A stretch of DNA of 64,000 nt, taken from NCBI GenBank assembly GCA_001179505.1, contig CDMY01000466.1, forward strand, positions 1 through 64,000. Direction: 5' to 3'. The first letter of the stretch is position 1. Every line of letters starts with the position of its first letter. This document shows, one piece after another, positions 10,089-37,778 of the stretch. The translations under genes were made by a program, and so were the position numbers. Below the pieces are notes generated by a model. The model worked only from the letters and a program-made list of their open reading frames with translations. It made no database searches and was not told where the DNA came from. The DNA is from Vitrella brassicaformis CCMP3155. Its lineage: Eukaryota; Protista; Chromerida.

Positions 10089-10120
<32 letters not shown>

Positions 10121-10373
10121 AGAGAGAGATGGATGAATAGATGGCCGGTGGTGCGTTCCGTCCCGTGACATCCCGTTCTCACAGGGGCCTCCGCTTTGCC
10201 GGCAGCAGGTGCCTTGGTGGGCTGAGACACCAGCAAACACATGACTGAAGCGTGTTGTTTGTGGTGTGGCTGACTGACTGACTGACTGACCTCTTTGGCC
10301 TTAGTTTGTGCCTGCTGCTTGGCGGCGTTGATGGCCTGCATGGCCGCCTTCTGAGACTCATACGCCTCTAAAC

Positions 10374-10404
<31 letters not shown>

Positions 10405-13400
10405 TATGCCTATAGATACCCATGGATCTGCGTGCCTCTGTGTGTGAGAGGTATACCTTCAGTGGGCACCGCCTTGACGTCGAATGGGAGTTCAGGCTGT
10501 GCAGCGATGTGCGCCTCCAGCGTCTGGCAGAGGGCGTCGAGGGAAAACTCGAGGTCGGCCTTCATCAACACCCCGTTGAACTCTACCAACAAGTCACCAT
10601 CCTGCAGACACACGCGCGCGCACACACAAAAAGGGACAAGGATTGCCTTGATGTGATGTGTGTAGTGAGGGGTGGCGTGATGTGATGTGTGTCGTCTTGA
10701 CCAACCTTGCCGCCCATCTTTCCCTCCAGCATGTTGCAGTAGAGGTTGGTGCGGTCGCGGACCTCATCGTCGTTGTCAGTCGTGCAGCTTAGGTGGACAC
10801 ACACACACGCACACACACACACATGGGTCGACGCGTGCTTTTCTCATGTGTGTGGTGTTCCGTTGTGCTGAGTGGCATCGTCACCTCTCCAGGAGTGTGA
10901 GAATGTCTTTCTTGAGTGTGGGGCATTTGAGTGCGATCTTGGTGAGCGCATCCACACCAGCGGCGCGGACCAAGGCGTTCTCCTGCACGCCATGCGACCC
11001 ACACACCACACATCACATCCATATGTGACACAGACGCTGCAAATGGCTCCGTGTCCGTCGTGTTATCGATGAACCCCCCCACCAGAATGAGTCTGTTGTA
11101 GATAAACCGGATGAACTTCGATGGCGACGATGTGGTGGGCGTCTCGTTGCCAAGAAACGACAAAATCTGCACGCAGACACGGGGAACGAAGCCAATGCAT
11201 CCACCCGCACGCGTGTGTGTGCGCGAAGTACGCACCTTGGTGCAGAGCGATGGGTACTCGCAGTCCTCAATGAACTCACACAGATGCAGCAATCCCGTCT
11301 CCTTCGCCTAAATGCCACACACAAACACACATACACAACACATCCAATCACACACACATGAGTGCCTTCTCTGTCTCTCTTTGCCTTTGTGTGCACCCAC
11401 CGCCCCCCCCCACTTGTGGAATTTGTTCGACGAGTAGGATGAGGGCGTCGACGATGTCCTTTTTGAACTCTGCGCTGCCCTCCTCCCGCAGGTTGGACGA
11501 CAGGAAGGCCATCAGCACCTTGTACTTGCTGGGGTAAGTCAGGCACAACGTCTTCACTGCACGAACCACCTCTACCTTGAAGTTGTCAGATATCTCTACA
11601 CACACACACACACAGGGGAGAGGGGATGGAGGGAGGGAGGCCTGCACGCGTCTGTGTGGCTCTGTGTGGCTGGTTGACCCACCCACCGGTCATGAAGGTT
11701 GTGATCTGTTTGATGAGTCGATCGACATTTGATTCGTGTCCCGTCTTCAGGAGCGTGGTGAGTGCCAGCGTGGCGATGTTTCTGTTCTGGTCGGTCAGCA
11801 ACGGCTCCATGTCCACGTTGCAGCGGGACACGACGTGCGGGCGGACTTGGGCCAACTGACACACACACACACACACACATAGGCGGATGCACACAGATGG
11901 AGTGGTCGCTGATGCGTTTGAGTGTGACCTTGTTGAGCATTCTGATGGAGGCGAATCTGACCACAGGCTTGGGCGACGTCAGGAATATCTGAAGCACTGC
12001 ACACCACACACACACACGCACACGCACACAGAGCGACTGCATACCTCGCCCTGCAACACATTGGGCTGGTGAGCAGAGGTACGTACCTGTGAGTGCTGGC
12101 AGCATGTCGTATCCGAACACAGTGGCGCCGCCCGAGCCCTGCTCGTCGACGACTGCCAGCTCGCAGAATGCCTTGGCGGCCTCAAACATGGCCATCTCGC
12201 TCTTGTGCCGCAGACAACTCTCCAGGTAATCCATCAACGCCTATCACAAATACAGACAGAAAAGGAGACAGACAAGAATGTCCATTCTGGTGTCCTTTCC
12301 CGGAGTGCTGCTCTGTCGGCTTATTCATCGCTTTACGTGTTCAAGGGCCGAGTCTCGCTCCGCCTTGAGCACCTGGGTGGCATACCTACACACCCACACA
12401 AACACACACACACACACACGTGTCCACCGTGGGGAAATGCCTCTCTCTGTCTTTGTCTCTCCGTGTGGTGGGTGTGGCCATGCCATGCACCGCACTACAT
12501 ACCTGATGAGTAGGCACTCTGCCATGGGGCTTTTGCCGAACGACTTGGTGAGTTGCGAGACCACCTTGTGGAGCGCCAGCCGGTCGTTCCTCTTGAGCTC
12601 ATAGAGGAGGCCCAGTGCATGGAACTGCACCATGGGGCTCTTGGACGACACGCTCTCCGTCACCTCATTCACCCACCTTGGCAGACAGACACAGCAGGCA
12701 CACACATGGCAGGCAGCACAGTCGTCGGTCGTCTGTGTGTGTGGTGTGTGGTGTGAGTGCGTGTCCCGTGCAGTCAGTCAGTCAGTCAGTGAGTCAGCCA
12801 CCTTCTGACGACTTCGGGTGCAGATCTCATGAGGTTGATGCCGCAGATGATGGCCGCCGACGCCACGAAGGGGCTCTTGTCCACTATGGCCTGAAACGGA
12901 CGCACACAGACACAGCGTCAGTCACACGTATGGGCTCATTGGCCTGTGCGTCTCTGTTTGTTCGTTTGTGTGTGTACGTTTTTGAGGTATCTGTCGATCT
13001 GTGCGGCCATTGAGGGGTCCAGAATGCGGCTCAACACACGGATGGCATTCGCACGGTAGCAGTCAGACTTGCTGCTCATGTCCTGCACACACACACGCAC
13101 ACACACACACACACACACAGATTTAGCATCTCCGGCACCCATCCCATCAGCCAGCGTGTGTATCTGCGTAATCAATCATCCATCTGTGTGTATCTCCCTC
13201 ACCTTAGTGAGTGTGGATGTGACGATGAAGACCTCTGTCTCGCTGACTTTGATGCTCTTGATGAGGAGGTACGTCATCCGCCGCAGCCGCTCGCTGCTCG
13301 ACTGGAACAGCTTGGTCGCACCGAAAAACAAATCTGTCGTCTCCTTCGACGACAACTTCTCCCCCTGACACACACACACACACCCCATCCCACACACAGA

Positions 13401-20088: not shown

Positions 20089-23000
20089 ATGCACCTCACA
20101 CACACGTCCCCAGTCGACAACGACCAGCCGGCGTCATCCAGTGCGTCGGCTGCCGCTGCTGCTGCTTCGGCCGGAGGAGGAGGTGGCGGTGGCAATGGCG
20201 TGGTGTCTGATGCGTGTCTGTGCCAGTGGATGGTGGACAGAATGGCAGATGTGGGTGAGCAAGGAGGAGCCACCCTTCCCTGCACACTGTGCCAGCAGAT
20301 ATACGTACGCACGGGAGAAGGAAAAGGAAACAAAACGAGACGCTTGATGTGTGTAGCTCTGTGTGTGTGTGTGTGTGTGTGTGCAGCACGAGGGGTGCGT
20401 GCAGTACTACGGCGAGAGGCGCCTGTTCGTCTGCCACATGTGCCGCTTCCGACAGATGGACCCTGGCAGACAATTAGTACACACATTCGCCACACACAGC
20501 ACACTGCAGCACAGGACACGAGTGTCGTCGTGGGCATGGACGGATGGATGGATGGATGGATGGCAGGTTGGGCGTCCCATGTGGTTATGTGCGCTGGGTG
20601 GCGGCAAAGACAGACGGGACCACCTCATCGACATGGAGAGACTTCTTGACGGGCGCCTGTGGTGGTCAGCCATGCACGCAACACAGACATCCGCGCGCAC
20701 ACACACATGCCACGTCATGTTCGCTATGCTCAGGGAGCGGCAGGCGATTGTCGTGCGGTGTCTGTCGGCCCACGACTCCTCCCCCAGACAAACGTGGCCT
20801 GAGGAACTGGATGTGACCGTCAACAGCGAGGTGGGCACATACACACACACACACACATACACACGCAACACAGCAGCCACCCGTGTGTGTGTATGTTGGG
20901 TGCAGCTGGCGATCCGATTCAAGAGGCAGCAGGCCGAGCGAGAAGAGCCCAGAGATGTACTCGGCCGCACACACACACACACACAGTCCATCTGATCCAT
21001 GTGTGTGTGTGTGTGTGTGTGCAGGTGACAAGATACTTCCTCACACACACCGTCAGCAACGTCACCGTCGAGTACCGCAACCCGCCCTCAGACGTACCCA
21101 CACACCACACCACACCACACCACACCACACCGATGTATCAGTGGCTGGATGGATGGATGGATGTCATATGTGTTGTGGTGTGTTGTGGTGTGGTGTGGTG
21201 TGTTGTGGTGTGTGTGCAGATTCGTATCCTGGGGTTCTTCGTGACCTCTCACGACCCCTGGGCCGACACGAATGTGCGCCGTCCGCCGACAAACTCACAG
21301 ACACGACAGACAGACAGACAGGCAGACAGACAGACGACCAAACCAACCTGCCTGCGTCACTCTCTCTCCCCTTCTGTGTTTGCTGTGCTATGTGTGTTTG
21401 ATGCACCGGTGCTGCGTCCATCCATCCATCCCTGCAGAGTCCCACATCGCAGCGGCAGAGTCTCAGGGACTTCTACGACAACGGGCCAGCGCCAGCACAA
21501 CCGCCAGCGCCACCAGCAGCAGCAGCGGCAGCAGCAGCAGCGCCGTCCTCGAAAGTCTTGACGGGGCGCAAGGCGACGGGGGGCAAGGCGTGAGCAAAGC
21601 ACTCACTCCACACACACACACACACACACACAGAGACACCCATGTGAAGCGTCACTGGGTGTCGTTGTGCTGCATGCAGGCCGAGGAAACAGGTAGCGAC
21701 GCTGCGCAGTGCCCCAGCAGCTGCCGCCAGTGCCGCAGCAGGGGCATCACCACCACCAGCAGCAGCAGCAGCAGCGCCGTCCTCGAAAGCCTGGACAGGG
21801 CGGCTCATGTGAGCAAAGCACTCACTCCATACAGACGCACACGCACACGCACACGCACACGCACACGCACACACAGACACAGACACAGACACAGACACAC
21901 AGACACCCATGTGAAGCGGCACGTGTCTGAGGTGTCTTTGTGCTGCATGCAGGCCGAGGGGTCAGCTGGCGACGCTGCCCAGTGGGTGGTGTGGCAGGAT
22001 GCAGAACCTCGGTGGGCCGTTTCCTAGCGGGGTGGCGTTTCTTAGCGGGGTGCCGTCTCGGCCCCAACCAGCACGCGACACCGAGGAGGAAAGGTGGGCG
22101 GCTGGGTGGAGGCGGGAGACAGACGCTGCCAGATACGAGTATTCGCCCCTCACTCTCACTCTCACTGTCTGTCTTTCCGTCCCCTTAATGGCTGCAGCGG
22201 TGGGCCATCGCGCGGTCGTTCGAGCAGCGTCCCCCGGTGGGTGTCGGCAGCACCCACCAGCCCCTCGGCCGCCCCCAACAGGTCAGCGTCGGCTCCACCA
22301 TCCCCAGCCAACAGAGAAACGTCTGCCGCCAGTGCCCCAGCAGCTGCCGCCAGTGCCGCAGCAGGAGCACCACCACCACCAGCAGCGGCAGCAGCAGCAG
22401 CAGCAGGTGGTGGTGGTGGTCCCATCAGGTGGCATTCAAGGACATGGCGGATGGACCTATCGGACGTCGCTGATGGGATGGATATGGATGACGACCGTAA
22501 CGGCCGGGACGATGACGACTCCGACTCCGACGAGGACATGCGGCCGATGAAGGAAAGGCTGGCCGGCCGGTTGCCGAAGGATGGCCTGGGGTTTTTCAGG
22601 TCCAGACGGGCCCCAAACATACCCGCAGAGTGAGCGGGGAAGTCGGCAAGCACAGACAGGACAGACAGTGATGAAGATGACCCCCCCCACCCCACACAGA
22701 CACACGTGGTGGCTGGACGTGTGTCTGTGTGTGCCAGGCCTGAGAGCCCAGGGGATCCGACCAAGTGCTGCTTGTGTAAGGTTGGCGAGCCGGCGGTGTG
22801 TCTGCAGCCGTGCGGCCACCTGCTGTGCGGAAGGTGCTTCGCCAGCAGGCCACTCGAGACTCTCGGCGGTCTCGAGAGGGCAGAGGAAGCCTTTGAGGCA
22901 GACCTGGTGCGTGCGGCAAACACCACCGACAAACACACATACTGCGTGAATGTGTGTGTCGATATGGGATGACTCCTCTCTCTCATTGTGTGTGTGTGTG

Positions 23001-26000
23001 TGTATTGGGGCGGTGGTCAGGACAATGTGTTGGACAGCAGGGACAACGAGCTCATCAGATCCTCATCATGCAGCCACGTCCACCGATGTCCCCGATGCAA
23101 CTGGTAGATCCACCCAGCTCTCACCCACCACCCACACTCCATCCATCCATCCATTCATCCACTCACGCACCTTTCTTCTCTCTTTAGGTCGGTGAACTGT
23201 ATCACGGAAGCGGACGGCAGCACGCCCGTGGACGGGTGGAGGTTCCTGGGGAAGAGCCTCAAGGACGTCCTCAGGCAGCGAGAGGCCATGGGCGACTCAT
23301 TGCGGATGGACCTCGAGGCTCTGCTCACCCGAGGCGACCTCAACGATGAGGGGGTGCGGGAGCAGATCAAGGCCATGATTTACCCCCGCCCTGCCGTCGC
23401 CAAGATGATCATGTCCAGGGGCATCGTCAAGGAAAACGATATGAGACAAGTAAGCAAGTCGGGCGTGGGTGAGGGAGGGAGGATAGACGGTCGTGAGGAT
23501 GACTGGCTGGCTGGATGCATGTGTCTGTGTCTGTGTGTTCGCGCTGTCTCTCTCTTTGTCTAATGTGTGTAGTTCTTCCCCGACCGGATGGCGTCTGTCA
23601 TTCGCTTCCTCCTCTTCAAAGGTACCAACACGACCAGAACCACCCGACAGACCAGGCCCCCATCGCCAATTTGTACCTGACCCCTTCCCCCCCGCCACCT
23701 CCCGCTGTCAGGCGATTGGTCCCTGGTCAACCAGCTGGTGCTGCACGGCCTCATTCCCCAACCTGAGCTCATCACCGTCCTCAGAGACGCATGCCAGCTC
23801 ATTCTCAAGGTCACGATGGCCGGTCGCGCCGAGTACCTGGCGCTCGTCGACACGCTCATCCCTCTGGCGAACATCAACCTCACCGATGACGATAGCTCCC
23901 CGCTGTCCATTCTCGCCAACAGAGAGGGCCCCTGCACACAGGCTGAGAGGGCCCTGATTGCCGAGTGCGTCCAGAAGCTGATTGACGGTGGTGCGCGTGT
24001 GGGGCGGTTCTCGCTTCGCCAGACGTTGCCGATGCCGCTGGTGCGGCAGCTCATCAAAGTCCCCAATTCTGACCTCACAGGTAGATTGATCAGGTCCACA
24101 GGCAGACCAGCACATCCACCGATGTATGTGGTCTGGTTGTGTGTGTGCATGTGTTCAGACATCCACCCCAACGGCGACACAATCCTCCACACGGTCATCA
24201 ACAGGATGTCACTCCAGGACTTCACGCGGCCCGTCGTCAAGCCCGACGGGTCCTACAACCCCGCCGTCGACGCCATCCTGACCATCCTCCGCATCCGCCG
24301 CCAGCCCGACGGCTCACTGCTGCTGCTCAAGGAGGGCAGACACTACCCCGACGCGCCGAGGGTGCCGGACAGAGTGGCGAGCATGGCCAACCTCGAGGGC
24401 CATCTGCCGCTGCATCGACTCATCAAGAAAGCCAGGGTCAGTCTGACAGTGTCTCTCACTCACTGCCTCTCTCTGTGGGCACTTGACACACTGCGGCCTC
24501 AACACAAGGGCAGGCGGGCAGGCAGGCAGGCAGGCAGAGGAGAGAAGTGGGGCGACAGCCGTGCGGCACTGCCTGCTTGCCTGTCTGTCTGTCTGTCTGT
24601 TTGTATGTTTGTATGTGTGTGTGTTAGGAGTGTGGCGGGTCGACCACGTGCAGTGCGGCCTTCGACCTGGTGCTCGAGGCGCTATTCAAACGAGGAGGCG
24701 CCCCATGGGTAATTATTATTGACGACATCGACAACATCAACTCGCACACACAAACACACCACACCCATGTGTCTGTGTGCATCTGTGTCTGTGTGAAGGG
24801 CTTCACCCGCAACCGCGCTGACCCCGCCAATGTTCATTTTGTGGACCCGCCCGTCTTCATCCATTGGAACGAGATCGTCCTGGGCGACGGCGACTGGATG
24901 CACAGGTGGTTCCACGACAAGCCGCTCCTGCGCAAGCTCTTCGCCAACGGGATGGACACCAACATCCGCGACACCAAGGGCAACACGCTGCTGCATCGAA
25001 GGTGGGGCGGGGCGGGGCGAGGCGAAGGGGGGGTGGGGGGAGAAGAGCAACACGGGCACTGACGAGAGAACCTGCACCCGTGCCCACTCTGTATGTGTGT
25101 CCCCGTGTGTGTGCGTGTGTGTGTGCAGCATCCGCCAGGGATCAGGTAGGTCACCCGTCAAACACGTGCAGAGATGCCATGACGACGCATTGCATTTCCC
25201 CCCGTTCTTTTGTCTTGCCTTTCCTTGCGTTGTGTGCAGCGGGTCGTGAGGACGTCGTGGGCTTCCTTCTCTCGCAGGGCGTCGACCCCTCCGCCCGCAA
25301 CCACGCCGGCGAGACCGCCCTCGGCATGCTCTACAATCTCATCGCCACTCGCCCACTCGCATTCGAGCCGGCGCACCTGCTGAGTGTGCTCGTGTCCCAC
25401 GGGGCCGACACCCACGACATCCGCCGCCACGATGGCCGCCCGCAGAGCCTCTTGAGCCTCTACAGGCCGCAGGGCATCCCGACCGCGGTGCGCCGTGGTG
25501 GGCCCGGCAGCACACCCCCACCGACCATCAGCGTGTCAGCGGAGCAGTATAGGGCTGTGAGCGATGCGGTGGCGTCTGGGGATCGAAATCAGTGGGTGCA
25601 CCAGACGGCATAATGGCATGTGTTGATCGACTGGAATGTGGTGCACGGTGTCGCATTTTGTTTGTATGTATGTATGCCAGGTTGGTGGGGGTGCTGGTCA
25701 ACATGTGTTTGATGAAGACCTTCTGGCCCGTCAACTCGCACATCCCACGGGTAAGTGAAGTTGGTGGGGCAGGGAGGGAGGGAGGGAGGGAGATGCGCAC
25801 GCACCCCGATACACACGACCATGGGTGTGTATGTGTGTGTGTGATGTGTCAGACCCCGTTGTGGCGTGAGGCATTGTTTGGTTCCCCCGGCCGTCTGATG
25901 AGTTACATGCGCATGGGGGCCCTCATCGACCCCATCCCGCCCGACCTTCGATCCAGACCAGCTACCGCCACCGTCATCCGAAGTACGCAACCCACCCGCA

Positions 26001-27245
26001 CATAACCGTGTGAACAACTATGGTCGCCTTTGCTTGTGGGTGGCGTCTGTCTGTCTGTGTGTGTGTGTGCAGCGTACCACTCGTATCTGCAGGGGAGCAA
26101 GAAGCGAGTCCGTTATGCGCTGGAGGGGTGGACGGCCGCCATGTCCGAACTCACCAATGACGTCCCGCGCGACTCGCCACTAGGCCACTTCCTCACCGAG
26201 CGGCTACCGGAGAGCCTCATGGCACAAGTCAGTACACAGCGACAGCCGACAAGACAAGACACACACACAGACATACTGACTATCTACGTATACCGACAGC
26301 ACCTGCACGTCTGTCTGTCTGGTTGTGGTGCGGTCCGCCGTGTTGGTTCAGTTTTATTCGTATATGCTGCCGCCGACGTTTGCAGCGCTGCCCTCCCATC
26401 TGTTCCCCGGCAACACGCCCTTCCACAATGCCTGTCGGGGCATCCTGACGTCGCATATGCACACCATGGCCACTGAGTGCGCCAAGGGACCCGGCGGCCT
26501 CGGTGAACCAGGAATCGGTGAGATCAATGACTGCATTACGTATGCGCTGCGCCATCTGTGCGGAGTGGATGGACTTTGCCTGTGTGTGTCTGTGTGTGCA
26601 GAGCTGCTCATCATGGCCTGTGTCATCCTCCTCGAGCCTGAAATACTCAAGGAGGGCCTCAGGGTAGGGTACGGTGCCAGAGTGGCCCCATGGAACTCCT
26701 CTGTCTGTCTGTCTGTCTGAGCTCAGGTTGGCATCTACGAGATGATTCCCCCGGCCACACCAGACCCACAGCAGCAGCAGCAGCAACAGCCATCATCATC
26801 ATCGTCATCATCATCGTCGAGCGGCGCTGCTCCTCTCCAGAGTGATGCATTCATGGCCCTCAGCGATGCCAACGCAGCGCTGTCGACACTCGAGGCAAGT
26901 GTGGAGGCCATCATGACGGCCCTACGCCAGGCCAAAGAGCAGGCTGCTGTCGACGGGGCGGCCAATGGGGGCGGCGGCGGGGGCGGGGGAGAGGCCGCAT
27001 CATCCCTCAACGCCGGACCACCTCAGCAGAGCAACAACAACGCGGCGACGGCAGCAGCCGCAGCCTCGGAGCCCGTAAGGCATACAGACACTTACATAGC
27101 AAGAAGGTGTGACCGGCCCTGGATGAGTGTTTGCTTCTTCCGTGGTTCCATTATGCAGGCGTCGTCCGCTGGTGTGGGTGTCCGGAGCGGCAGCGCTGGT
27201 GGTGTGGATGAGTCGGCAAGGCCCGCCCGCAGACAGAGGCTGTGA
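20089..27245 (+). CDS. PHD finger / PINIT-like / Ala-Pro low-complexity / C3HC4 RING / ankyrin-repeat protein (about 25 exons)
   Basis: GT-AG phases chain consistently from PHD (CLC...CTLCQQIY|HEGC...CHMCRFRQMDP) through PINIT-like (QTWPEELDVTVNSE, EPRD|VTRY, ILGFFVT), RING (CCLC..QPCGHLLCGRC...CPRC) and ANK (NGDTILH, DTNIRDTKGNTLLH, GVDPSARNHAGETAL). The model includes a 17-nt micro-exon at 25129-25145. The start codon and the last two or three exons are uncertain. Confidence 0.7.
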
Positions 27246-27569
27246 CTCACTCGCACATCGGCAGTCAGTCAGTCTGTCGGCCACAGCAGCAGCATAGCAG
27301 AAGACAGGCCAGCAGAAATCAATTAATTGATTGATGCAGGTCAATTGATTGATGCAGTGGGGAGGGCGGGAGGCAAGGAGGGAGTAATTTTGCCCCTAGG
27401 TGGGTTTTGACCTGGTCGGTCAGCGTGTCTGTGTGTGGCTTGCGAACCAATTGAACCGATTGTCTGGGCTGATCAACACAACTGCAATGCCCGAAGCAAT
27501 GACTTCGATCCCTCCTCACACACCTGCGAGCTTCTATCAAACGAACCAATAAACGAACGATGCTGGCGG

Positions 27570-27633
27570 TTCGGACTGTTTGGACACTCTGGATCTACCA
27601 GCAGTGTCGCAGATATGCAGCGTTATCGCAGCC
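27570..27633 (+). promoter_or_regulatory. Conserved 64-nt element with stem-loop, copy A, immediately upstream of and spanning an in-frame AUG
   Basis: Matches 33884-33947 with 7 mismatches, all transitions. Stem GACACT-CTGG / CCAG-c-AGTGTC at 27583-27608, loop ATCTA. Confidence 0.6.
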
Positions 27634-28901
27634 TCTTCGTCCAGTGTGGTTCCGTCCACACGATGGTGCGCCTTCTCCGCCTGCTGATCCTCTTCCTTCT
27701 TGCCGCAGCCGTGCTTGGCTTCACGTTGCCTCCTCATTCCCGCCGTTCTGCCATCGGTGCTTTCCGGTCTCGTAGAGAGGCAAGTCGACGCCGCAGGGGA
27801 CTCATGCACATGGTATGCACTGACGCAGCCAAGACGCTCACACTGTGTGTGCCTGTCTGCCTGTCTGTTTACTGCCAGGTGACGTTCCGCAACGTCAGAG
27901 AGGGCTCCGGCTTCCGCCCCATAATGGAGGAGGAGTGGCAGCTCAACCCGCTGGAGATCCGCCGCAACATCTCTGAGGGCGACTTTGGGACTCGAATTAA
28001 CACATCCTTCACGCTTGGCAAGGAGTTCGACCACCCCGCCGCCTTGCTTGGGACGCTGGTGTGGCCCATTGTGCAGGAAGTGGCCATCGCGGGCTACCCC
28101 AACTTAATTATGCACGCGCACAACCTGTGGACGCGATTCAGCCGCCAGACGGGCAAACTCATGGGAGAGGTACGGACGTACAGACAGTGAGAGATTGTCA
28201 ACCACACAGGCGAATTTCACGCCAGCACTCACTCCCTGGCCTGCCTCTATTGCTGTGAATATCAGCAGCCCGCCTTCGTCCTCACATGGGGTGAGACATC
28301 ACAGGCCGTTCTTCTGGATCGTCTTCGACGGCAGCGGTGGCCCACTCGACCTGGCCAAGACGGCCGCACACATCCGCAAGAAAAAACTCGGCAGCGTAAG
28401 CCAACACACAGGCACACCCAGCCACTCACACCCACACCCACTCACACACACACACGGGGACGGGTGTGTGTGTTCTTGTTGCAGCATGGGGCGGTGACGG
28501 ACGGGCTCGAGTGGTACATGGTGGAGCTGCCTGATGAGAAGGACAGCCCCGGACCGGATGAAAGGCTGGGTTTGTCCCGTATGAAGTCATGCGTCACATT
28601 CGACATCTGTGACCAGGTCAGCCGCACACACACACGCACATCTGTGTGTCGGCAGCTGCTTTAACGCATCCATGTGCTGCCTTGATGTCATTCACAACAA
28701 TATGCCCAGGCTCAGGATATCGTCGACTGGATTCTGGGCAAGCTGAGGGAGCGGGCGGCCGAGTGCCCAGAAGAGTGGGAGCACACGCCGGAGTGGCGGT
28801 CGACACGGGCAGCACGGGAGGAGGCCGAGAGGGCCGCACAGCTCGAGAAAGAGAAGAAAAAGAACCACAAGAAAAGTGGGCAGACGATGGCAACCACCTG
28901 A
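27615..28901 (+). CDS. Putative plastid-targeted protein of unknown function, possibly a degenerate restriction-endonuclease-like fold (5 exons)
   Basis: In-frame ATGs at 27615 and 27663. Signal peptide MVRLLRLLILFLLAAAVLG-F, then an Arg/Ser-rich transit peptide. Exons chain to ...GQTMATT* (TGA 28899-28901). Contains GAVTDGLEWYMVEL. The boundaries of the third exon are uncertain. Confidence 0.65.
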
Positions 28902-29312
28902 GCCTGAGGGCGCAGCCAGGTCGGTGGGTGGGTGGGTGGAAGGCGAGGGGGGCAGGGAGGGGCTGCCTGGGTGGCTGTCGGTAGGGAGAGGCAGACTCTC
29001 TCTCTCGTCGGGGTAGTGAGTGGGTGCATTTATGTCAGTCAGTCAGTGATGGACGGATGCTTTGGGTCTTTTTGCCGTGTACACAGTGATGCTTTGAGAT
29101 TTCATACACGGGTGCCTGTCCGCTCGCTGTGCGTTGCACCCAATCGCCTGGACGGATGCATGGACTCAGTTTGCGCCTTGATCATTGACGAAGTTCGTCT
29201 ACATACTGTCCAAATGCACCCTCCCTCCCTCCATTTGTCCCCCTGTCAGTCGCCGCCCCTCTCCACTGCAATCGATCAATCAAATCAATCAATCACAGAG
29301 GCAAAAACAGCC

Positions 29313-32300
29313 TCAACGAGCCATGGTTGCAGCTGACCAGCCCCGCACAAAGAAGGCGTCCATCGGCAGCTTGTACGTAACAGAAGCAAATGGCGCTCGC
29401 AGCATTGCCTTAGCTGTATCACTCTGATCCCGCTGACGACAATAGTAGGCCTGCAAGCTGCCATCCGCATGGTCCAGCCCCCACTCTTTATCGCTCTCGC
29501 AGTCGCTCATTGCATCGTCGTGACCCAGTCTCCCTCCCCCGTCTGATGTACCATCTCCATCAACCGCGCGATCGATCAGCCCCATGCCACCCTCGTGTTC
29601 CATCTGGCCAGAGCCCATTAGGCCTCCATCGGTGCTGCTGACGGCTGCCGTGAAGCCGAAGGAGACACACAGGGACAGTGGCACCAACGCATCGAGCTCC
29701 AGTGAAAAAGTGCACGTGACGGAGGATTTGCTGTCAATGGGGTCCAGCAAAACGCAGCGAGGGGACGAGTGACGGACGGATGAGCCGCAGGTGGAGAAAG
29801 TCCTGGGATGGAGCTGCAGTGTCGCGCTCAAATTCTCGAGCAAGCGGTGAGTCGTGTTGTGGATGTCGATGTGAAGCAGCAGCCCGACAGCAGGGATCAA
29901 GCGGGAAGCCTCGAGACGGCGGCAAAATCTGGAGAGGTCAGAGAGAGGAACCTCAACACAGCGGCACACATTGTGTCCTCTCACTTGGCTTGGTGTTGCA
30001 GGGTGATCATCAGTGGCGCCACGCTTAGCGTCACAGGCCGACCGAAGGTGTCAATTCCAAGCCCTTCAGACTGCTTCACGAGCCCGTGATGCCTCGTCAT
30101 TCCCTCATCGCTCCACTCCCAGTAAGCCGCTAGCCAGTCATCCCACTCCCATTTCTCCTCTCCTTGCAAGGTCTTCACATCCATAGATCTCTCGATGACC
30201 TGCCGCATCGATAGGAGGTAGTCGACTGGCCGATTCGCGTATGTTGACAGGACGGACTCGGGAATGGTGGCCTTCAAGTGTTCAGCGATGGCACGCTGAC
30301 AGCTCTGAAGCTCCTCTGCTGCTCTGTCGATCAGCTGCAGGCACTGAGGCAACCACTCGCTCGGCACTGACTGGGTGGGCAGTTGGTCGGCCAGCCCCGC
30401 AATCATTCTCATGATGGCCAGGTGGCGCGTCGGGTTGAGAATGCAGTCGTCTTTCTTCGATCGTCCGCTCAGGGCCCGCAGAAGGCCAACAAGGCAATGC
30501 AGACGGTGCATGAAGCCACACAGCGCCACCGACGGATCCGCTGCTCTCTTCTTTGCCACCAATCCCTTGCCCAGAGACCAGCAGACGATGTCAACGAAGG
30601 AAGGAGGGGCAGAAGGGTTTATAAAAGGGGCAATGAAGGTCGCCCACAGCACATGGCTGAAAGCCATGGTGCGCTCGACAAGGGTTGACCCCGCCAGTAG
30701 GTCAGCTGTCAGGCCCTTGTCGTCGACGGTCGCCTCGACAGTCACCACTTCCTTGTCGAGAGCCAGCTTGACTCCCTTGCTCTGTCCTCCCTTGGCAGCC
30801 GTCGTCATGCCTCTTGCCACCTCCACCCACGCGCCCATCGCATCGCTGCTCGCCTCGCCCACCACCGTGCCCCACTGAGCCACACAGCTGTCGAGAGAAG
30901 ACGGGAGAAGGCATCCCTTATGTGAAAGCTGCTTGGTGGCCCGCTCGGTCGCCTCTTCAGCACGAGACGTGCGGTAAGGCTCCACAGCAGCCCACTGGTT
31001 GACCGACAAATTGCGTGCCGTCGCCGCCGCCTCTCCTCGTGTCCCCTTCGGCTGCCGCCGCGGCGGTCCTGCTTGTCTCGTGCGCCCCCGAAGGAACGTG
31101 AACGGCTGGTCTTGCGCCTTGGGCCGCCGCCTTCTCGGCTGCACGGCCGTCGCTCTCACTTTGGCGTTTCTCTCGTGATATATCAGTCTGGTGAACGCAT
31201 CGGGGGCAGTAAGAGACGAGGCTGCATCCGTTGGGGCAGAGGGAGGGGGAGCTGAGGCGCGAGGAACAGCAGAGGACTTTTGCATTGACGCGGCTTGGTA
31301 GGATGACAGGGTCGCCTTGGCAACGTGGAGGGTCGTCAGATACCGGCGGACACGATGATGAGCGCTGGAAATGCTGTCCACCACGGCGGCTGTCGTACCT
31401 TCCCTCGTTCTCCTTGCCGGGAGAACCCTAACAGAGGCACTGATGGATGGTGGCTGTGCGCGTGGCGAGCAGGGCATGGCGTGGAGAGGCTGGATGACGG
31501 CCGACAGATGGCCGATGAACTCCAGTAGAGCAGCTGGCGTAGAGTCAGGGTGGGTGGTGCGGAGGGATGACGCAAAGTGCTCCAGCAGAGACAGGGTCGG
31601 TGGGGAGCCTGAAAGCGGAGTGAGAGTTTTCAGGCAGTGGTGTCCGTATGCCTGACTTACCGTCTTGTGTTGATGCCTTCTCTTCGTCCTTCCACACCCA
31701 CGGGCCCTTGCTGTCCCCCTCGGTCTCCATATGTCCTCTCAGACGTGGCAGGTCCACTGTGCTCGCAGGGAAAGCGACGGTCAGCGCTGCCTGCACGGCC
31801 TCGTCGACCCTGTCACCCCTGCTGGTCCTTTCGTCATCCGTGACAGCCTGTTGTAGTAGCCAGAGCATGACGGTAGCGCGGCAGCCGAGGAAGGAAAGAA
31901 GGCGCTGGCATGGGGGGTCCGGACGGGATGGGGATGGGGCCGACGGGTGTGGGAAGAAGGACTGGAGTGGTGATGGACTGGGGAGCAACGACAGAATGTC
32001 TGATACCACATGCCGGGCTAAGGCGAGAATCTGACGCAAAGACAGAAACACGGATCCGACGCGTTTACAGGCATTGGTCCATCCGCTGTGCCGCTTTTCC
32101 TTCCTGCCCTCACCTGTTGCGCATCTTGCCGCTCGATAGCCTCCCTTCCCCTGGCCCTCCCCATGACGGCTATGACGCCGAGCCGCCACAGCCACACCTC
32201 TTTCATCACTAGTCGCCTCACAACGTCATCGCCCCCCTCATCCTGCTGTAAATCGGCCACGCTCATGACATTCTCGCACTGCACATCCCATATGCACGGC

Positions 32301-33757
32301 AGACCGCACAGCGCCCAGCCCATGCCGGTGCCATCGCCACCCGACAGGAGCGCAGGCACCGACCGTACCACCTCGGCGAGCGATGGCAGGATGGCGGTGA
32401 GGAGGTCGTCATAGGTGGCGTTGTGCTCTGCGAGGAGGTCAACCAGGGTGAGGACGGCACAAGACGGATGCAGGCGACACTGCGACGCGTCGCTGTCTGT
32501 GGGGCGATGGAGGGCGGTGGATATGAGGAAGTCCAGGATTGAGAGCGATGTGGTGAATAGTGGCTGAATGGAATGGCGAAGAGACGGAGGCCCTCGCGAT
32601 GCCTTCTCGACCAGGGTGAGGGGGGACAGGGCTGCTTGAATGTAACGGGCACACATAGCGCGATCGCCAGACATGCTCAGGCCCTGCCAGCAATGAACCA
32701 ACCAAGACAGTCATCAAGATTGTGTCACAAAGTCGTCTGCTCTTTGTAAGTGACTGACCATGCCATCGCCGGCCGTGAAGGTAGCGTAGCTCGCAATCTC
32801 CTCCGCCGTGTCCTGTCCCCTCCTGTTGGTGAGATTGGCCACAAATGGCCACGCCAGGACCGAGGCACGCCCAGCCGCCTTGATCGCCCAACGACCCATC
32901 TCCACCACACCCATACCAATACCCACACCAGCAGAACCATCAGCAGAGGCCGGCGTGCATTTCACTAGGTCCACAAGAGCACACACGATGAACATGAGAG
33001 GGTCGACCGGCTCGTCAGATGAAGCATATGGCTGAGGGGGGTTGCGCAGCGGGTGAGTGCGGGTGGCATCCAGGAGGGTGGTGGCTGGATAAGACGACAC
33101 CACAAGCGCTTCGGGCACGTGTGCGATGAAGCGGAGGGCGGCGATGGCCAGACGCTCCTTGCCAGAGAGGGGGCTGTTAGCGTCCTTGTGCACGTTGCTT
33201 TTGTCAAGGATGGCTGCAAGTGTCGCATAGATGTCGTTCAGGGCAGCGACGATCAACAGCTCACCAAGACTGGCTTGACACGCATCGCCAGGGGAGGTGT
33301 CGTCCGCCGCCTCCTTCGCCAGCGGGTAGAGCCCCCTGCTGGCTGCCGATCCGCCGCCTAACACACAGCGGACAATCGCGGAGGCGTCTTCACGGCCAAG
33401 GGCCGCGCTCAAGCAGGAGACCATCATGTCGTAGGCCTGTATCTTGAGACTGGCAATCGATGCTTGTGCGCTGGCATCGCCCCGGGACTCACGGGATGGT
33501 GCGGCCATGAAGATGGCGCGGGTGAGGGCCGGCAGATAGGCCAGCGATGGGTGCAGCGCAGGCCTGGGAGAACGGAGAGCGTCTTCGAGCGACTTGGATA
33601 AGACTGTGAGTGAAGTCGCCTGAACACGTAACACACCACATCATTCACCACACACACGTGGATGCATTCAATGCATTGCTGAGAACTTCAGTCGTCTGAC
33701 CATCTTCTTGAGCCGCGCCTGACCATCTTCTCCTGCTCCATGAGAATCTTCCGCCAT
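29313..33757 (-). CDS. Large alpha-solenoid protein with a C-terminal adaptin/coatomer appendage-like segment (TPLATE/beta-COP-like, tentative)
   Basis: Six exons chain in phase from MAEDSHGAGEDGQARLKKM| to ...YKLPMDAFFVRGWSAATMAR*. The body is Leu/Ala-rich and helical. The C-terminal region has a beta-sandwich-like pattern (LLLHIDIHNTTHRLLENLSATL...VTCTFSLEL..LCVSFGF). The family assignment is inference only. Confidence 0.55.
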
Positions 33758-33883
33758 TTGCTTCGCATCCACAATCAGACCACTGCAGTGCCCAGAGATC
33801 TGAACAGCGGTTTCATGGAGGACCCTAGGCGGCCAAGGGTTTCGAAGCCTTTATCAGAGAGCAGATTGACAACGCCGGCGGCC

Positions 33884-33947
33884 TTCGGACTGTTCGGACG
33901 CTTTGAATCTATCAGCAGTGTCGCAGATATGCAGCGCCATCGCAGCC
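33884..33947 (+). promoter_or_regulatory. Conserved 64-nt element with stem-loop, copy B, immediately upstream of and spanning the TUTase AUG
   Basis: Homolog of 27570-27633. The stem at 33897-33922 keeps all pairs through two G-U wobbles and one compensatory G-C to A-U change. Confidence 0.6.
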
Positions 33948-34387
33948 TTTCGGTATCGGCAGTCTCTGCTCTATCGACACGGCTCACCCAGCCGACCACA
34001 CGGCCTCTCCCGCCTTGTTCAGGGCTGTCTTTGGCCCCTGCTGCCCCACCATGCCCCGCCACACACAGATCATGTGCATCAGCCGCATCGACAGTCACTG
34101 ATGGCGTCGGTGCCAAAAATGACTTTGATGCGGCACCATCGGTGCATCTGGCCTCTTCTTTCCTGGCGGGCCTCTACAGGCGGCACCCGGAGCGGTTCAC
34201 CCGCGAAAATGCACTTGCATTGCAGCGATACTGCGCTGACCATGGGTGCCCCGTTTCTGGTGCACGGGGCGGTGGGGAGGATGGGGACAGCCACAAGGAG
34301 AGGTACTTCAACCAGCTCACAACCGAGGTACGGGCACCAGAAAGTGAACCACACACACCACAGCACAGCGCACACATCTCTCTCTCC

Positions 34388-34420
<33 letters not shown>

Positions 34421-36495
34421 TGTGTGCTGTGTGTCAGTTGCGTGCGCACGACCGGCTGCTGAAGCCGACTCGCGATCAGTTTCGTCAGAAGAAGGATCTG
34501 GTGGCCCTCTTCCAGCCGCTACTCGAGTCGCGAGTCGGCGGCACGCTCCACACCTTCGGCAGCTGCGAGAACGGCTTTTGGATCGCCGGCAGCGACGTCG
34601 ACTCGTGCCTGGTGCTGAAACACTGTGCCACTAAACAGGCCTGCCTCTCGAAGCTGAAACTGGTACCTACCAAGTGACACAGCGAGAGGGACAGAGGGGG
34701 AGAGAGGGGGGGGGGGGGGGGGGGGGNNNNNNNNNNNNNNNNNNNNNNNNNNNNNNNNNNNNNNNNNNNNNNNNNNNNNNNNNNNNNNNNNNNNNNNNNN
34801 NNNNNNNNNNNNNNNNNNNNNNNNNNNNNNNNNNNNNNNNNNNNNNNNNNNNNNNNNNNNNNNNNNNNNNNNNNNNNNNNNNNNNNNNNNNNNNNNNNNN
34901 NNNNNNNNNNNNNNNNNNNNNNNNNNNNNNNNNNNNNNNNNNNNNNNNNNNNNNNNNNNNNNNNNNNNNNNNNNNNNNNNNNNNNNNNNNNNNNNNNNNN
35001 NNNNNNNNNNNNNNNNNNNNNNNNNNGTGCGTCTGTGTATGTGTGTGTCGCTGTGTGTGGGTGCAGGTGCGTTCATTGCTGCAGCGTGCAGCGGTAGCTG
35101 AGCGTGTGGACGTCATCCCTGCGCAGGTGCCCATCGCCAAGGTGTACGACAGGCAGGACCGCAACACGTGTGACGTGTCCATCAACAACACCGCCGCACT
35201 CGAGAACTCGCAGCTCGTCGGCACACTCAGCAGAATAGACACGCGCATCCGGCCGCTGGGGCGATTCATCAAGTACTGGGCCACACGCAGGCAAATCAAC
35301 AACAGGTCAGCCGCCGGGCAGGGCGAGTGAATGAATGGGGCGATTGGTAGATGGATCGATGGATGGATGGATGGTATCTGTTGTGTGTAGGTCTCAGGGT
35401 ACACTGAGCACCTACACCCTGATGCTTCAGCTCTTCTACTTCCTGCAAATAAGGGACCCGCCCATTCTGCCGCTCTACAAGTAGACACACACTGGCACCA
35501 TCAGCACCCACCGATGAGTGCAGCACATCACATGCTATCTGCGCAGGCTGCTGGAGTTCCCCGAGGCCGCAGCTCGTGAGTCTGAGCAGAAGGACATGGA
35601 CGAGACAATCAAAGACCTAGATACAGGTGCGTGGGTGAGGTGGACGCCCCCAAGACGCCCCGGCACTCGGCCACGTCGCATTTGTGTGTGGTGTGACCGA
35701 TGTGTTCAGACGAGAGTTCTGACGACGACAGGCCGCGGGATGAAGAAGGTGAGCAGCGATGGATGCACTTTTTGGCTACAGACATGCATCGATGGCTGTG
35801 TGTGAGTGAAGCTATGGGAGTATTGTCTTGTCTTGTCTTGTGGTCGGTCAGATGCAGTGGCGGCCGACGACAGGGAGTTCGACCACATGTCAGGGGAGCT
35901 GCGGCCGCTGCCGTTCCACTCAGACGTCAGGTCAGCTGGCCAACCAGACAATCAGCCAGAAAGTGGCTTGTGACATTGAATGTGTGTGTGCAGGTACATA
36001 TCTGAGCATTTGTTTCGTGAGAATCGCCGCAACCGCGACTCACTGGGGAAACTCATTCACGAATTCTTCATGGTACGTCCGTCGTGTCATGCTCAAAGAA
36101 AAGACACCCCAAAGGAAAATTCTTCTCCTGTCGTTATTTGTCTGTCAGCTGTGGGGTGACGAGCAGTTTGCCGGCGGCGGCATGGGCCGCACCGTTCAGA
36201 TCTACGACGCTACCAACCACGTATGTGCCACGATGGCAGATGGCAAGCCCATCCACACGAGTGGGTGCACATCTATCACTCTGTGTCTGTCCACTCATGT
36301 GTGCAGTTGAACGACCAGGGTGTGTTGGTGATGAAGTGTCCCCTGACCAAGAAGAACGTCAACCCTTTCACCATAGAGGTCTGGCAAACCATCTTCCAGG
36401 AATTCAAAAGGGCCAGGAGACTCCTGCTCACCGTGAGGGCGACACACATATACGCCTACCCCCCGTCGATGGATGCATCTGTGTCTGCCTGTCTG

Positions 36496-36529
<34 letters not shown>

Positions 36530-37778
36530 AGGGTGCATCCCTCAGTGAGGTGTGTGAGGCAGCGGCCGACAACCCCATCAGCCAGCGCGATCGGTGCCGG
36601 AGGCAGGAGCGGCTCAAGGCACAAATACTCGCGAAGGAGCTCGGCCTGCTCAAAGGCACCGCGCCACCCACCCTATCCTTCCTCACCAACATGGCCTCTC
36701 CAACCCCTCCCACCACCCCTCCCACCCGGCAGCACACACCTGACGTCACCCAAAGCACTTTGACAGACGAGCCATCTGCTGCTCCCGAGCCCCCTGCTGT
36801 TGAGTTAGAGGAGGCGGCCTTGGTGATGGACAGCGGTCATGATGGCGACACCAGCAGCAGCAGCAGCAGCATCCGGGAGGATGCCTTAGCGGCAGGATTT
36901 GAGGAGGTGCCTCCCTGGCTGACCGAGGCGGCTGAGGCGATGGCCATATCGGCCAAGAAGGCCGCTAAACAGAAGAAAAAGGCGGCTCGGCAACTGGCGG
37001 CAAACAAGGCTGAGGCAGTGCAGGAGATCCCTCTTGACCCGGCAGAGGCGGCCCCCACAGGAGAGGGCAGCAGCGAGCCTGCTGAGGTCCATCCTTGGAT
37101 CACCGCCGAGTCGACATGGGATGAGGACGAGCCTACGGCCACATCCACAAAGGCCGCCAAGAAGAGCAAGAAGAAGCAGGGGTTGCGTCATGGGTCGAGG
37201 ACGGTCCTGCCTAATCTGGAGAGTGACATGGCTGATCTGGCTGACCTCAGGGCACAGAGGCGTGAGATCGACCAGCGGATCAGGGCCCTCCAGGAGGCCG
37301 TCAGGAATCCGGTCGAGAACCACACCAAGCTGCAGAGACAACGGCGGGGCAAGGGGGAGGGGAGCGGGGACAGCGCTGCCCCTCCAGGCCCTGTCGCTGC
37401 TGGTGGTGCTGGTGGTGACAAGTCCGGTGGCAAGGCCAAGAAGCGGAGAAAAGACGCACAATCGCAGACGTACGTGGCCTAGTGATACAGACACGCTCAG
37501 ATCGTGACGCATCACAGATATGTATGTGTTTGTGTGTTTGTATGTCTGTTTGCTGCAGTGACGTTGCCACCGAGGACGACGGCAGTGACGATATGTGGAT
37601 GTCGGTGGGGGCAAAGCCAAGAGATGATCAGCCGACGACGTCACCATCCCCGCCATCGGCCCCACTGCCGTCGGTGGGTGACGACGGCAATGAGGTGGTG
37701 GTGGTGGCAGCCAGGCTGAGGGGGGCTGGGGAGGGCATGAGTACAGGGGTCCAACACAGTGATGCGTGCGTGGGGTGA
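33929..37778 (+). CDS. Cid1/TUTase/GLD-2-family non-canonical terminal nucleotidyltransferase with a mitochondrial-type presequence
   Basis: Signature FGSCENGFWIAGSDVD and third Asp in CDVSINN. Also RPLGRFIKYWATRRQINNR|SQGTLSTYTLMLQLFYFLQ and the PAP-associated region NRDSLGKLIHEFF. The N-terminus MQRHRSLSVSAVSALSTRLTQPTTRP is R/S-rich and lacks acidic residues. It has a long charged C-terminal tail. An alternative in-frame ATG lies at 33740. Confidence 0.9.
34727..35026. other. Assembly gap (300 N) inside a TUTase intron, preceded by a poly-G run
   Basis: N run seen directly. The flanking exons (..SKLKL| and |VRSLLQR..) join in phase, so no exon needs to be missing. Confidence 0.95.

What the first reader, a model, noticed from the sequence alone, without database searches (positions are those of the whole stretch)
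27570..33947. Conserved 64-nt hairpin element with compensatory base changes just upstream of in-frame AUGs of two unrelated organelle-targeted genes
Seen: 27570-27633 and 33884-33947 match at 57 of 64 nt, and all 7 differences are transitions. Both fold into the same 10-bp stem with a bulged C and an AUCUA loop (27583-27608; 33897-33922). All four differences inside the stem keep pairing: A-U to G-U, C-G to U-G, and a double compensatory G-C to A-U. A possible outer helix (CUGU/GCAG) also survives. In both copies the element contains an AUG 6 nt after the stem, in frame with the downstream CDS (MQRYRSL.. and MQRHRSL..). The two genes are otherwise unrelated: a plastid-leader protein and a mitochondrial-type TUTase. 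Inference: this is a structured 5'-UTR translational control element or a small mobile structured repeat that donates start codons.
Basis: partly seen in the sequence, partly recalled or inferred. Interest (0 to 1): 0.75.

Follow-up and report, generated by a model that had tools for sequence, protein, structure and literature searches.

The report
Copied 5' leader shared by neighbouring genes
An 85-base stretch (5' leader, a small hairpin, a start codon and six codons) was copied between two neighbouring unrelated genes of the alga Vitrella brassicaformis; it is transcribed, but it has only three genomic copies and no statistical sign of a selected RNA structure, so it looks like an ordinary small duplication.

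Summary
In detail: 27570-27633 and 33884-33947 match at 57/64, all 7 differences are transitions, and both fold into the same 10-bp stem. Homology really spans 27557-27639 and 33869-33952.

The window is Vitrella brassicaformis contig CDMY01000466.1. RNA contigs cover both copies, so the element lies in the mRNA leaders.

It is not a dispersed family. Genome contigs of two DNA runs, a covariance model and the assembly give three loci: gene A, gene B, and A', a paralogue of gene A about 80 kb away made by a 6-kb duplication (88-90% identity).

- In A' a transversion breaks a stem pair, and a deletion puts the element's AUG out of frame (10-codon uORF).
- A third paralogue, A'', has no element and starts at the Met that matches Met17 of gene A.
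- The stem is -12.5 (A), -7.8 (B) and about -6 kcal/mol (A').
- Covariation is at chance level (173/500 shuffles).

Best reading (about 0.6): a neutral or nearly neutral copy of a leader segment between neighbouring genes. It supplies gene B's start codon and an upstream AUG in the A genes. A regulatory hairpin is not excluded (about 0.2): the all-transition pattern is somewhat unusual.

The parts
27557..27639 (+). Copy 1 of the shared leader segment (5'UTR, AUG and first codons) of gene A
   Evidence: blastn 27557-27639 vs 33869-33952, 84.7% over 85 columns, E 1.7e-18. Covariance model score 112 bits. Covered by RNA contig X4 record 10, which starts at 27551.
27583..27608 (+). Hairpin of copy 1: 10 bp, bulged C, AUCUA loop
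   Evidence: -12.5 kcal/mol; 0.5% of random 26-mers of the window are as stable.
27615..27617 (+). AUG inside the element; annotated start of gene A (MQRYRSL...)
   Evidence: P0001 starts here. Context has G at -3 and C at +4.
27663..27665 (+). Second in-frame AUG (Met17), start of the signal peptide MVRLLRLLILFLL; probably the ancestral start of gene A
   Evidence: Aligns with Met1 of paralogue A'' and with the annotated Met1 of paralogue A'. Context has A at -3 and G at +4.
27560..27562 (+). Copy-1-specific upstream AUG, 9 nt from the start of the RNA contig; opens a 71-codon out-of-frame ORF
   Evidence: Absent in A' and in copy 2.
27615..28901 (+). Gene A (303 aa, CEM-type unnamed protein, signal peptide plus transit-like leader), an orphan family confined to Vitrella
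33869..33952 (+). Copy 2 of the shared leader segment, in gene B
   Evidence: RNA contigs X4 record 11 and X5 record 15 contain it near their 5' ends.
33897..33922 (+). Hairpin of copy 2: same architecture, with two G-U pairs and one A-U in place of G-C
   Evidence: -7.8 kcal/mol; 8% of random 26-mers are as stable. 64-mer z-score +0.14.
33929..33931 (+). AUG inside the element; the only in-frame AUG of gene B exon 1 (33929-34327)
   Evidence: ORF list. Splice reading GAG|GTACGG after 34327 and CAG| before 34438, both phase 0. The next exon hits the MTPAP-like palm domain.
33929..37778 (+). Gene B, an MTPAP-like nucleotidyltransferase (annotated from 34209, 749 aa; contains an assembly gap at 34727-35026)
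29313..33757 (-). Intervening gene (1365 aa) transcribed divergently from gene B; only 171 nt separate its ATG from gene B's ATG
23113..29083 (+). 6-kb segment duplicated (88-90% identity) at positions about 107.5-113.3 kb of the same contig, reversed. It carries paralogue A' with the third, decayed copy of the element (L005 9933-9995).

Best explanation
The element is an ~85-nt piece of mRNA leader: about 58 nt of 5'UTR with a small hairpin, an AUG, and 6-7 codons. It was copied once between the leader of the gene A lineage and the leader of gene B, which lies 6.3 kb away on the same strand. The likely route is a short local duplication, a templated insertion or an ectopic gene conversion. 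The copy was made before the 6-kb duplication that produced A and A'.

Since then the copies have drifted at about the rate of other duplicated DNA in this genome. In gene B the element's AUG serves as the start codon. In gene A it is an in-frame upstream AUG, 16 codons ahead of the ancestral signal-peptide Met. In A' a deletion has turned it into a 10-codon out-of-frame uORF.

Shown: the homology, the copy number, transcription of the element, and its decay in A'. Inferred: the copying mechanism, its direction (B to A weakly favoured, because paralogue A'' lacks the element), and neutrality.
For: 1. Homology is one contiguous tract with no similarity in the flanks.
2. There are only three loci genome-wide. 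Two DNA runs laid at 80% likeness show only A, A' and B. The covariance model finds nothing else in the window or in 42 kb of related loci.
3. Divergence of the tract (85-89% identity) equals that of the 6-kb A/A' duplication (88-90%).
4. A' has a stem-breaking C-to-A transversion, a 3-nt deletion before the AUG and a net 37-nt deletion after it. Its hairpin drops to about -6 kcal/mol and is absent from the minimum-energy fold of its 62-nt context. A' is nevertheless expressed and spliced.
5. Paralogue A'' has no element within 200 nt upstream, and its Met1 aligns with Met17 of gene A.
6. Covariation is at chance level.
7. In the element's reading frame 5 of the 7 differences are non-synonymous (my reading), so no coding constraint explains the identity.
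Against: - The six differences between copy 2 and the inferred A/A' ancestor are all transitions. The local A-versus-A' spectrum in well-aligned parts is 12 transitions to 15 transversions. That gives P about 0.003-0.007, or 0.05-0.09 with a transition share of 0.65-0.67.
- All three stem changes on that branch keep pairing, and one is a double compensatory change.
- The G-U pairs make the copy-2 stem work only as sense-strand RNA.
- An in-frame AUG in two unrelated genes would be lucky for a purely random insertion, though out-of-frame insertions would be selected against.
- The third copy could simply be a decaying paralogue, which would say little about A and B.
Confidence: 0.6

Rival explanations
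1. The hairpin is a selected cis-regulatory RNA element of the 5' leader, a protein-binding site in the manner of an iron-responsive element. It would co-regulate translation of gene A (a plastid-leader protein) and gene B (an organellar-type nucleotidyltransferase).
For: - The element is transcribed in both mRNAs.
- The same stem architecture is kept through 4 changes, including one double compensatory change.
- All differences between A and B are transitions, against a local transition share of about 0.44.
- The copy-2 stem pairs only on the sense RNA strand.
- The hairpin sits 6 nt before the AUG in both.
Against: - There are only three copies, and one of them (A') is broken yet expressed.
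- Covariation is not above shuffles (173/500).
- The copy-2 stem (-7.8 kcal/mol) is within the range of random sequence.
- Stems this weak have no passive effect in yeast (PMC7445769).
- No Rfam family matches.
- No conservation outside this genome could be shown.
Confidence: 0.2
2. The selected feature is the start codon with its basic N-terminal tip (MQR-Y/H-RSL). The cassette would give an alternative, longer N-terminus that changes organelle targeting (dual targeting by alternative initiation) in gene A, and would provide the presequence start in gene B.
For: - The AUG is in frame in A and B.
- The tip is Arg-rich like a presequence.
- Gene A has a second, better-context AUG at the signal peptide, which allows two isoforms.
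Against: - In A' the AUG is out of frame.
- A'' lacks the extension altogether.
- Codon 4 differs between A and B (Y versus H).
- There are no targeting data.
Confidence: 0.12
3. It is a small mobile structured repeat (MITE-like), or a DNA-level promoter palindrome recognised by a transcription factor.
For: - The segment has sharp 5' and 3' limits.
- It contains an inverted repeat close to the transcription start.
- One RNA contig (X5 record 15) carries 31 unrelated nt exactly at the 5' limit of the strong homology.
Against: - Only three loci exist, two of which are related by a 6-kb segmental duplication.
- I saw no terminal inverted repeats or target-site duplications in the flanks.
- The DNA palindrome is degraded in copy 2 (8 of 10) and in A'.
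- In gene B the element lies at least 30 nt downstream of the RNA start.
Confidence: 0.06

Closest known systems
Short interlocus duplication / ectopic gene conversion that transfers a 5'UTR and start codon between genes (5'-end capture)
   Same: One contiguous tract of about 85 nt, on the same chromosome and strand, 6.3 kb apart. Flanks are unrelated, and divergence equals that of another duplication in the same region.
   Different: The tract is unusually short and ends up in frame in both genes. The mechanism and the direction were not shown.
Iron-responsive element (IRE) and similar protein-bound 5'UTR hairpins shared by unrelated mRNAs
   Same: A small hairpin with a bulged C in the 5' leader of functionally different mRNAs, too weak to block scanning by itself.
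   Different: The loop is AUCUA, not CAGUGN. The bulged C is on the 3' strand, 4 bp below the loop. No Rfam hit. Only three copies, one of them broken.
Upstream AUG / uORF leaders and alternative initiation for dual targeting
   Same: In A' the element's AUG opens a 10-codon uORF that overlaps the main start. In gene A it is an in-frame upstream AUG ahead of the signal-peptide Met.
   Different: No evidence that either AUG is used. In gene B it is the only candidate start.
Miniature inverted-repeat transposable elements (MITEs)
   Same: A short, structured, repeated segment with sharp ends near genes.
   Different: Three copies only; no terminal inverted repeats or target-site duplications seen.

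Membership tests
Iron-responsive element (IRE) | Six-nt apical loop CAGUGN | tested here: not met
   The loop is the pentaloop AUCUA in all three copies. CAGUGU occurs only inside the 3' arm.
Iron-responsive element (IRE) | Unpaired C on the 5' strand, five base pairs below the loop | tested here: not met
   The bulged C is on the 3' strand, four pairs below the loop.
Iron-responsive element (IRE) | Match to the Rfam IRE covariance models | tested here: not met
   No Rfam family at E up to 1 over 9 kb. Only three chance-level hits at E up to 10 over 151 nt, none of them an IRE.
Iron-responsive element (IRE) | Binding by an IRP/aconitase protein | not testable with these tools
   Needs a binding assay.
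MITE / dispersed mobile repeat | Many dispersed copies in the genome | tested here: not met
   Contigs of two DNA runs at 80% likeness show only A, A' and B. The covariance model finds nothing else in 64 kb plus 42 kb.
MITE / dispersed mobile repeat | Terminal inverted repeats and target-site duplications | tested here: not met
   None seen by inspecting the flanks of the three copies. The homology fades gradually on the left.
Spliced leader (trans-splicing) | The shared sequence forms the extreme 5' end of mRNAs and joins at an AG acceptor | tested here: not met
   RNA contigs carry 19-45 nt of locus-specific genomic sequence upstream of the element. There is no AG at 33882/33883 or 27568/27569.
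Local segmental micro-duplication / ectopic conversion tract | A contiguous tract of significant identity with unrelated flanks | tested here: met
   85 columns, 84.7% identity, E 1.7e-18. No other non-repetitive homology between 26500-28600 and 32800-35000.
Local segmental micro-duplication / ectopic conversion tract | Divergence in line with neutral duplicates of the same genome, with no excess conservation | tested here: inconclusive
   85-89% identity against 88-90% for the 6-kb A/A' duplication. A' has a stem break and deletions. The A-versus-B differences are all transitions, which the local spectrum (12 transitions to 15 transversions) makes somewhat unlikely.
Selected RNA secondary structure (generic) | Covariation above shuffled and slid controls | tested here: not met
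   29 of 30 cells are paired, with 1 compensatory pair. 173 of 500 shuffles reach the observed values. P(all pairs kept | 4 transitions in the stem) is 0.13-0.18.
uORF / upstream-AUG leader | An AUG in the transcribed leader upstream of the homologous main start | tested here: met
   A': AUG at L005 9990, 11 nt before the main ATG at 10001, 10 codons, out of frame. A: AUG at 27615, 48 nt before Met17. Use by ribosomes was not tested.

The most novel reading that the evidence does not exclude
The hairpin-plus-AUG cassette is a genuine post-transcriptional control element, bound by a protein. It would couple translation of the Vitrella-specific plastid-leader protein family (A/A') to that of an organellar-type terminal nucleotidyltransferase, a small RNA regulon for organelle RNA processing in a chromerid. 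Plastid transcripts of chromerids are known to be poly(U)-tailed (PMC3894158).
Probability: 0.12. Interest if true: 0.6.

Novelty: new member of a known kind. Interest (0 to 1): 0.27.

Why it matters
If the best reading holds, this is a tidy but ordinary example of how a short duplication can hand one gene's 5' leader and start codon to a neighbour. It also shows how such a piece decays in a paralogue. It corrects two gene models: the start of gene B, and the missing first exon of CEM22697.1.

Only if the hairpin proved functional would it matter more. It would then be the first described 5'UTR control element in chromerids, linking two organelle-directed genes.

Tried and rejected
- **Rfam:** nothing over 9 kb at E up to 1, and only chance-level hits over 151 nt at E up to 10.
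- **Metagenome scan with the 22-mer core:** one hit in an AT-rich unrelated contig with unrelated flanks, so chance. I did not follow it further.
- **Covariance model from the two copies:** no further copy in the window, L005 or L006 apart from A'.
- **Earlier scan notes:** nothing by sequence or by words on this element.
- **Conserved upstream coding extension:** rejected. Both ORFs are open upstream, but 5 of the 7 differences are non-synonymous in that frame.
- **Spliced leader or upstream exon as the source of the 31 nt on RNA contig X5 record 15:** no AG acceptor, and the 31-mer is absent from the window and all fetched loci. Left unexplained.
- **Divergent allele:** I first read the second version of gene A seen in the reads this way. 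It is in fact paralogue A' on the same contig.
- **Gene A function:** Pfam finds nothing. A single-sequence AlphaFold model is unusable (pLDDT 42). The ESM Atlas gives only a weak PD-(D/E)XK / HsdR-N-like lead (TM 0.38-0.46).
- **Gene B exon 1:** no relatives of similar length. The length rule hides full-length kin.
- **Literature:** no paper on 5'UTR hairpins in Vitrella.
Full report
**1. The observation**

The two stretches are as described. 27570-27633 and 33884-33947 match at 57 of 64, and the seven differences (element positions 12, 17, 20, 23, 29, 54, 55) are all transitions. The shared exact 24-mer never appears in 100 shuffles of the window. A sensitive blastn between the two neighbourhoods returns one real hit, 27557-27639 against 33869-33952 (85 columns, 84.7% identity, E 1.7e-18). 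Otherwise it returns only low-complexity matches, so the homologous tract is about 85 nt with unrelated flanks.

Both copies can form the same 10-bp stem with a bulged C and an AUCUA loop (27583-27608 and 33897-33922). The four stem differences keep pairing. The ATGs lie at 27615 and 33929, 6 nt after the stem.

**2. Where this is**

A look-up of the annotated protein places the window at positions 1-64000 of Vitrella brassicaformis CCMP3155 contig CDMY01000466.1.

| Gene | Window position | Notes |
|---|---|---|
| Ankyrin-repeat gene | 20089-27245 (+) | upstream of gene A |
| Gene A | 27615-28901 (+) | 303 aa, starts MQRYRSL |
| 1365-aa gene | 29313-33757 (-) | divergent from gene B |
| Gene B | annotated 34209-37778 (+) | 749 aa, MTPAP-like palm domain |

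The annotated start of gene B is not the element's AUG. However, an ORF runs from 33929 to a GAG|GTACGG donor after 34327. The CAG acceptor before 34438 is also phase 0 and leads straight into the palm-domain exon. RNA contigs of 2.3 and 2.9 kb begin just upstream of the element. I therefore take 33929 as the likely true start. Codon statistics are only weakly in favour.

**3. Transcription**

I laid contigs of four public runs on 27400-28000. X1 and X2 retain the 66-nt intron 27813-27878, so they are DNA. X4 and X5 skip it (GT..AG) and have no depth inside it, so they are RNA.

- In X4, the contig of the upstream gene ends at 27493.
- Nothing covers 27505-27546.
- A gene A contig starts at 27551 and runs through the element into the spliced exon 2.
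- Gene B contigs contain copy 2 with 45 nt (X4) of genomic sequence upstream of it.

Contig ends are only lower bounds for the transcription starts.

**4. Copy number**

At 80% likeness, the DNA runs X1 and X2 placed only three kinds of contig on the element: locus A itself, copy 2, and a divergent second version of the gene A region. A covariance model built from the two copies found nothing else in the window with filters off; the next best hit had E 0.29. A 22-mer scan of the metagenome collection gave one chance hit.

The second version turned out to be a paralogue. An exhaustive HMMER search with mature gene A found only two clusters, and both contain Vitrella proteins.

- **A' (CEM15504.1, 294 aa)** lies on the same contig about 80 kb away, in reverse orientation. 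It sits inside a 6-kb duplicated segment, window 23113-29083 against L005 5586-11411, at 88-90% identity.
- **A'' (CEM22697.1)** lies on another contig and is 55% identical.

The "family" is thus three loci, and two of them are related by a segmental duplication. It is not a dispersed or mobile repeat.

**5. What the third copy says**

The A' leader (L005 9933-9995) keeps the first 42 nt of the element with three changes.

- G4 to C, a transversion.
- C16 to A, a transversion that breaks the C16-G37 pair.
- G at position 17, shared with copy 2. The G-U pair at 17 is therefore ancestral, and the A-U pair of gene A is derived.

A' also lacks GAT before the AUG. After ATGCAG, 39 nt are replaced by 2. 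The AUG is now 11 nt before the main ATG and opens a 10-codon out-of-frame uORF.

The annotated A' protein starts at MVRLF..., the equivalent of Met17 of gene A. Only a 7-bp upper stem can form (-6.1 kcal/mol), and the hairpin is absent from the minimum-energy fold of the 62-nt context (z +0.42). Even so, A' is expressed and spliced.

The deeper paralogue A'' has a transcript whose Met1 (MRVVYVLLISLALVPAVFG) aligns with Met17 of gene A. It has no element in the 200 nt upstream. So the native start of this family is the signal-peptide Met. The element was acquired in the A/A' ancestor, or lost in A''. Its AUG is dispensable there.

**6. Is the structure selected?**

| Test | Result |
|---|---|
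| All 10 pairs survive, given 4 random transitions in the stem | 13-18% |
| At least 4 of 7 transitions in the stem and all pairs kept | 1.5-2% |
| Three sequences: cells paired | 29 of 30, one compensatory pair |
| Shuffles that do as well | 173 of 500 |

Core stabilities are -12.5 (A), -7.8 (B) and about -6 kcal/mol (A'). Of random 26-mers from the window, 0.5% reach the first value and 8% the second. In yeast, 5'UTR structures weaker than about -22 kcal/mol have no measurable effect (PMC7445769). A passive block is therefore unlikely, and any function would need a binding factor.

Two points favour constraint:

- The six differences between copy 2 and the inferred A/A' ancestor are all transitions. 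The well-aligned A-versus-A' differences listed are 12 transitions to 15 transversions. That gives P about 0.003-0.007, rising to 0.05-0.09 at a transition share of 0.65-0.67.
- The G-U pairs make the copy-2 stem an RNA-sense feature only.

This is a hint, found post hoc on a handful of sites. It is not a demonstration.

**7. Best explanation**

A short leader tract was copied between neighbouring genes and has since drifted. Its identity (85-89%) is the same as that of the adjacent 6-kb duplication (88-90%). One copy is visibly decaying. Nothing beyond the three loci exists. In the element's frame, 5 of the 7 differences are non-synonymous, so coding constraint does not explain the identity.

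The direction B to A is weakly favoured, because A'' shows the A family without the element. In gene B the AUG is the only in-frame Met of exon 1, so the tract matters there as the start codon. I give this reading about 0.6, a selected regulatory hairpin about 0.2, a selected N-terminal or alternative-start module about 0.12, and a mobile or promoter element about 0.06.

**8. Comparison with known systems**

It works like a 5'-end capture by micro-duplication. It resembles an IRE only superficially: the loop, the side of the bulge and the Rfam models all fail. It is not a MITE (three copies, no TIR or TSD). It is not a spliced leader either, because locus-specific sequence lies upstream in the RNA contigs and there is no AG acceptor.

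**9. Limits**

- I could not search the whole Vitrella assembly or any other chromerid genome by DNA. The genome-wide statement rests on Logan contigs of two DNA runs (from which a filter may drop records) and on the annotated proteome.
- The single read-laying run covered copy 1 only. The statements on copy 2 RNA come from contigs that overlapped the homologous 65 nt.
- One RNA contig (X5 record 15) carries 31 nt before the element that match nothing available. Since 31 is the assembler's word length it may be a tip artefact, but it remains unexplained.

Noticed in passing
window 23113-29083; L005 5586-11411 (contig CDMY01000466.1, about 107.5-113.3 kb, reversed): A 6-kb segmental duplication at 88-90% identity. 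It carries the 3' part of the ankyrin-repeat gene and all of gene A. It produces paralogue A' (CEM15504.1) about 80 kb away in inverted orientation. Short stretches such as gene A exon 2 are identical between the copies, which suggests patches of gene conversion.
   Followed up: partly
window 33929-34437: The annotated CDS of the MTPAP-like gene starts at 34209 in a frame that does not continue into the palm-domain exon. A model from ATG 33929, with intron 34328-34437 (phase 0 at both ends), does continue, and it adds about 133 residues with a presequence-like N-terminus.
   Followed up: partly
L006 9824-10000; L004 26-331: The annotated protein CEM22697.1 (paralogue A'') starts at MISYRNM and lacks its first exon. 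The transcript contig L004 shows an upstream exon that encodes a signal peptide, MRVVYVLLISLALVPAVFG.
   Followed up: partly
RNA contig X5 record 15, laid at window 27570 (equivalent to 33884): 31 nt at the 5' end of a 2.9-kb gene B mRNA contig (CTACAGCGGAGAGGAGCTGGACTACAGAAC) replace the genomic upstream sequence exactly at the 5' limit of the strong homology. They are absent from the window and from all fetched loci. The cause could be an assembly tip of word length 31, a chimera, or an RNA-level junction.
   Followed up: partly
window 27615-28901 (gene A), L005 10001-11224, L006 about 9824-10990: The gene A family seems confined to Vitrella: three paralogues, and an exhaustive HMMER search of 1.84 billion representatives finds only their two clusters. 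All have a signal peptide followed by an Arg-rich stretch with F or W right after the predicted cleavage site, as in chromerid plastid leaders. The ESM Atlas model gives a weak lead to PD-(D/E)XK / HsdR-N-type nuclease folds, mostly cyanobacterial (TM 0.38-0.46). An AlphaFold model without an alignment was unusable.
   Followed up: partly
window 27560-27775: An AUG 9 nt from the start of the gene A RNA contig opens a 71-codon out-of-frame ORF that overlaps both candidate starts. It is specific to copy 1: A' has AAG here, and copy 2 has no AUG.
   Followed up: no
window 34727-35026: A 300-N assembly gap, preceded by a poly-G run, lies inside gene B between the two palm-domain exons, so part of the catalytic domain may be missing from the assembly.
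   Followed up: no
window 33757-33929: Only 171 nt separate the ATG of the divergent 1365-aa gene from the ATG of gene B. The gene B RNA contig already starts at or before 33839. This is a very compact bidirectional promoter with short or overlapping leaders.
   Followed up: no
L003 231-270: The transcript contig of A' uses a different splice pattern from the annotated gene A model. An extra exon piece (cagcccgccttcgtcctcacatgggg) is included and a 14-nt stretch is retained. The annotated A' protein carries the corresponding RPAFVLTWG residues, so the gene A model may miss a small exon.
   Followed up: no
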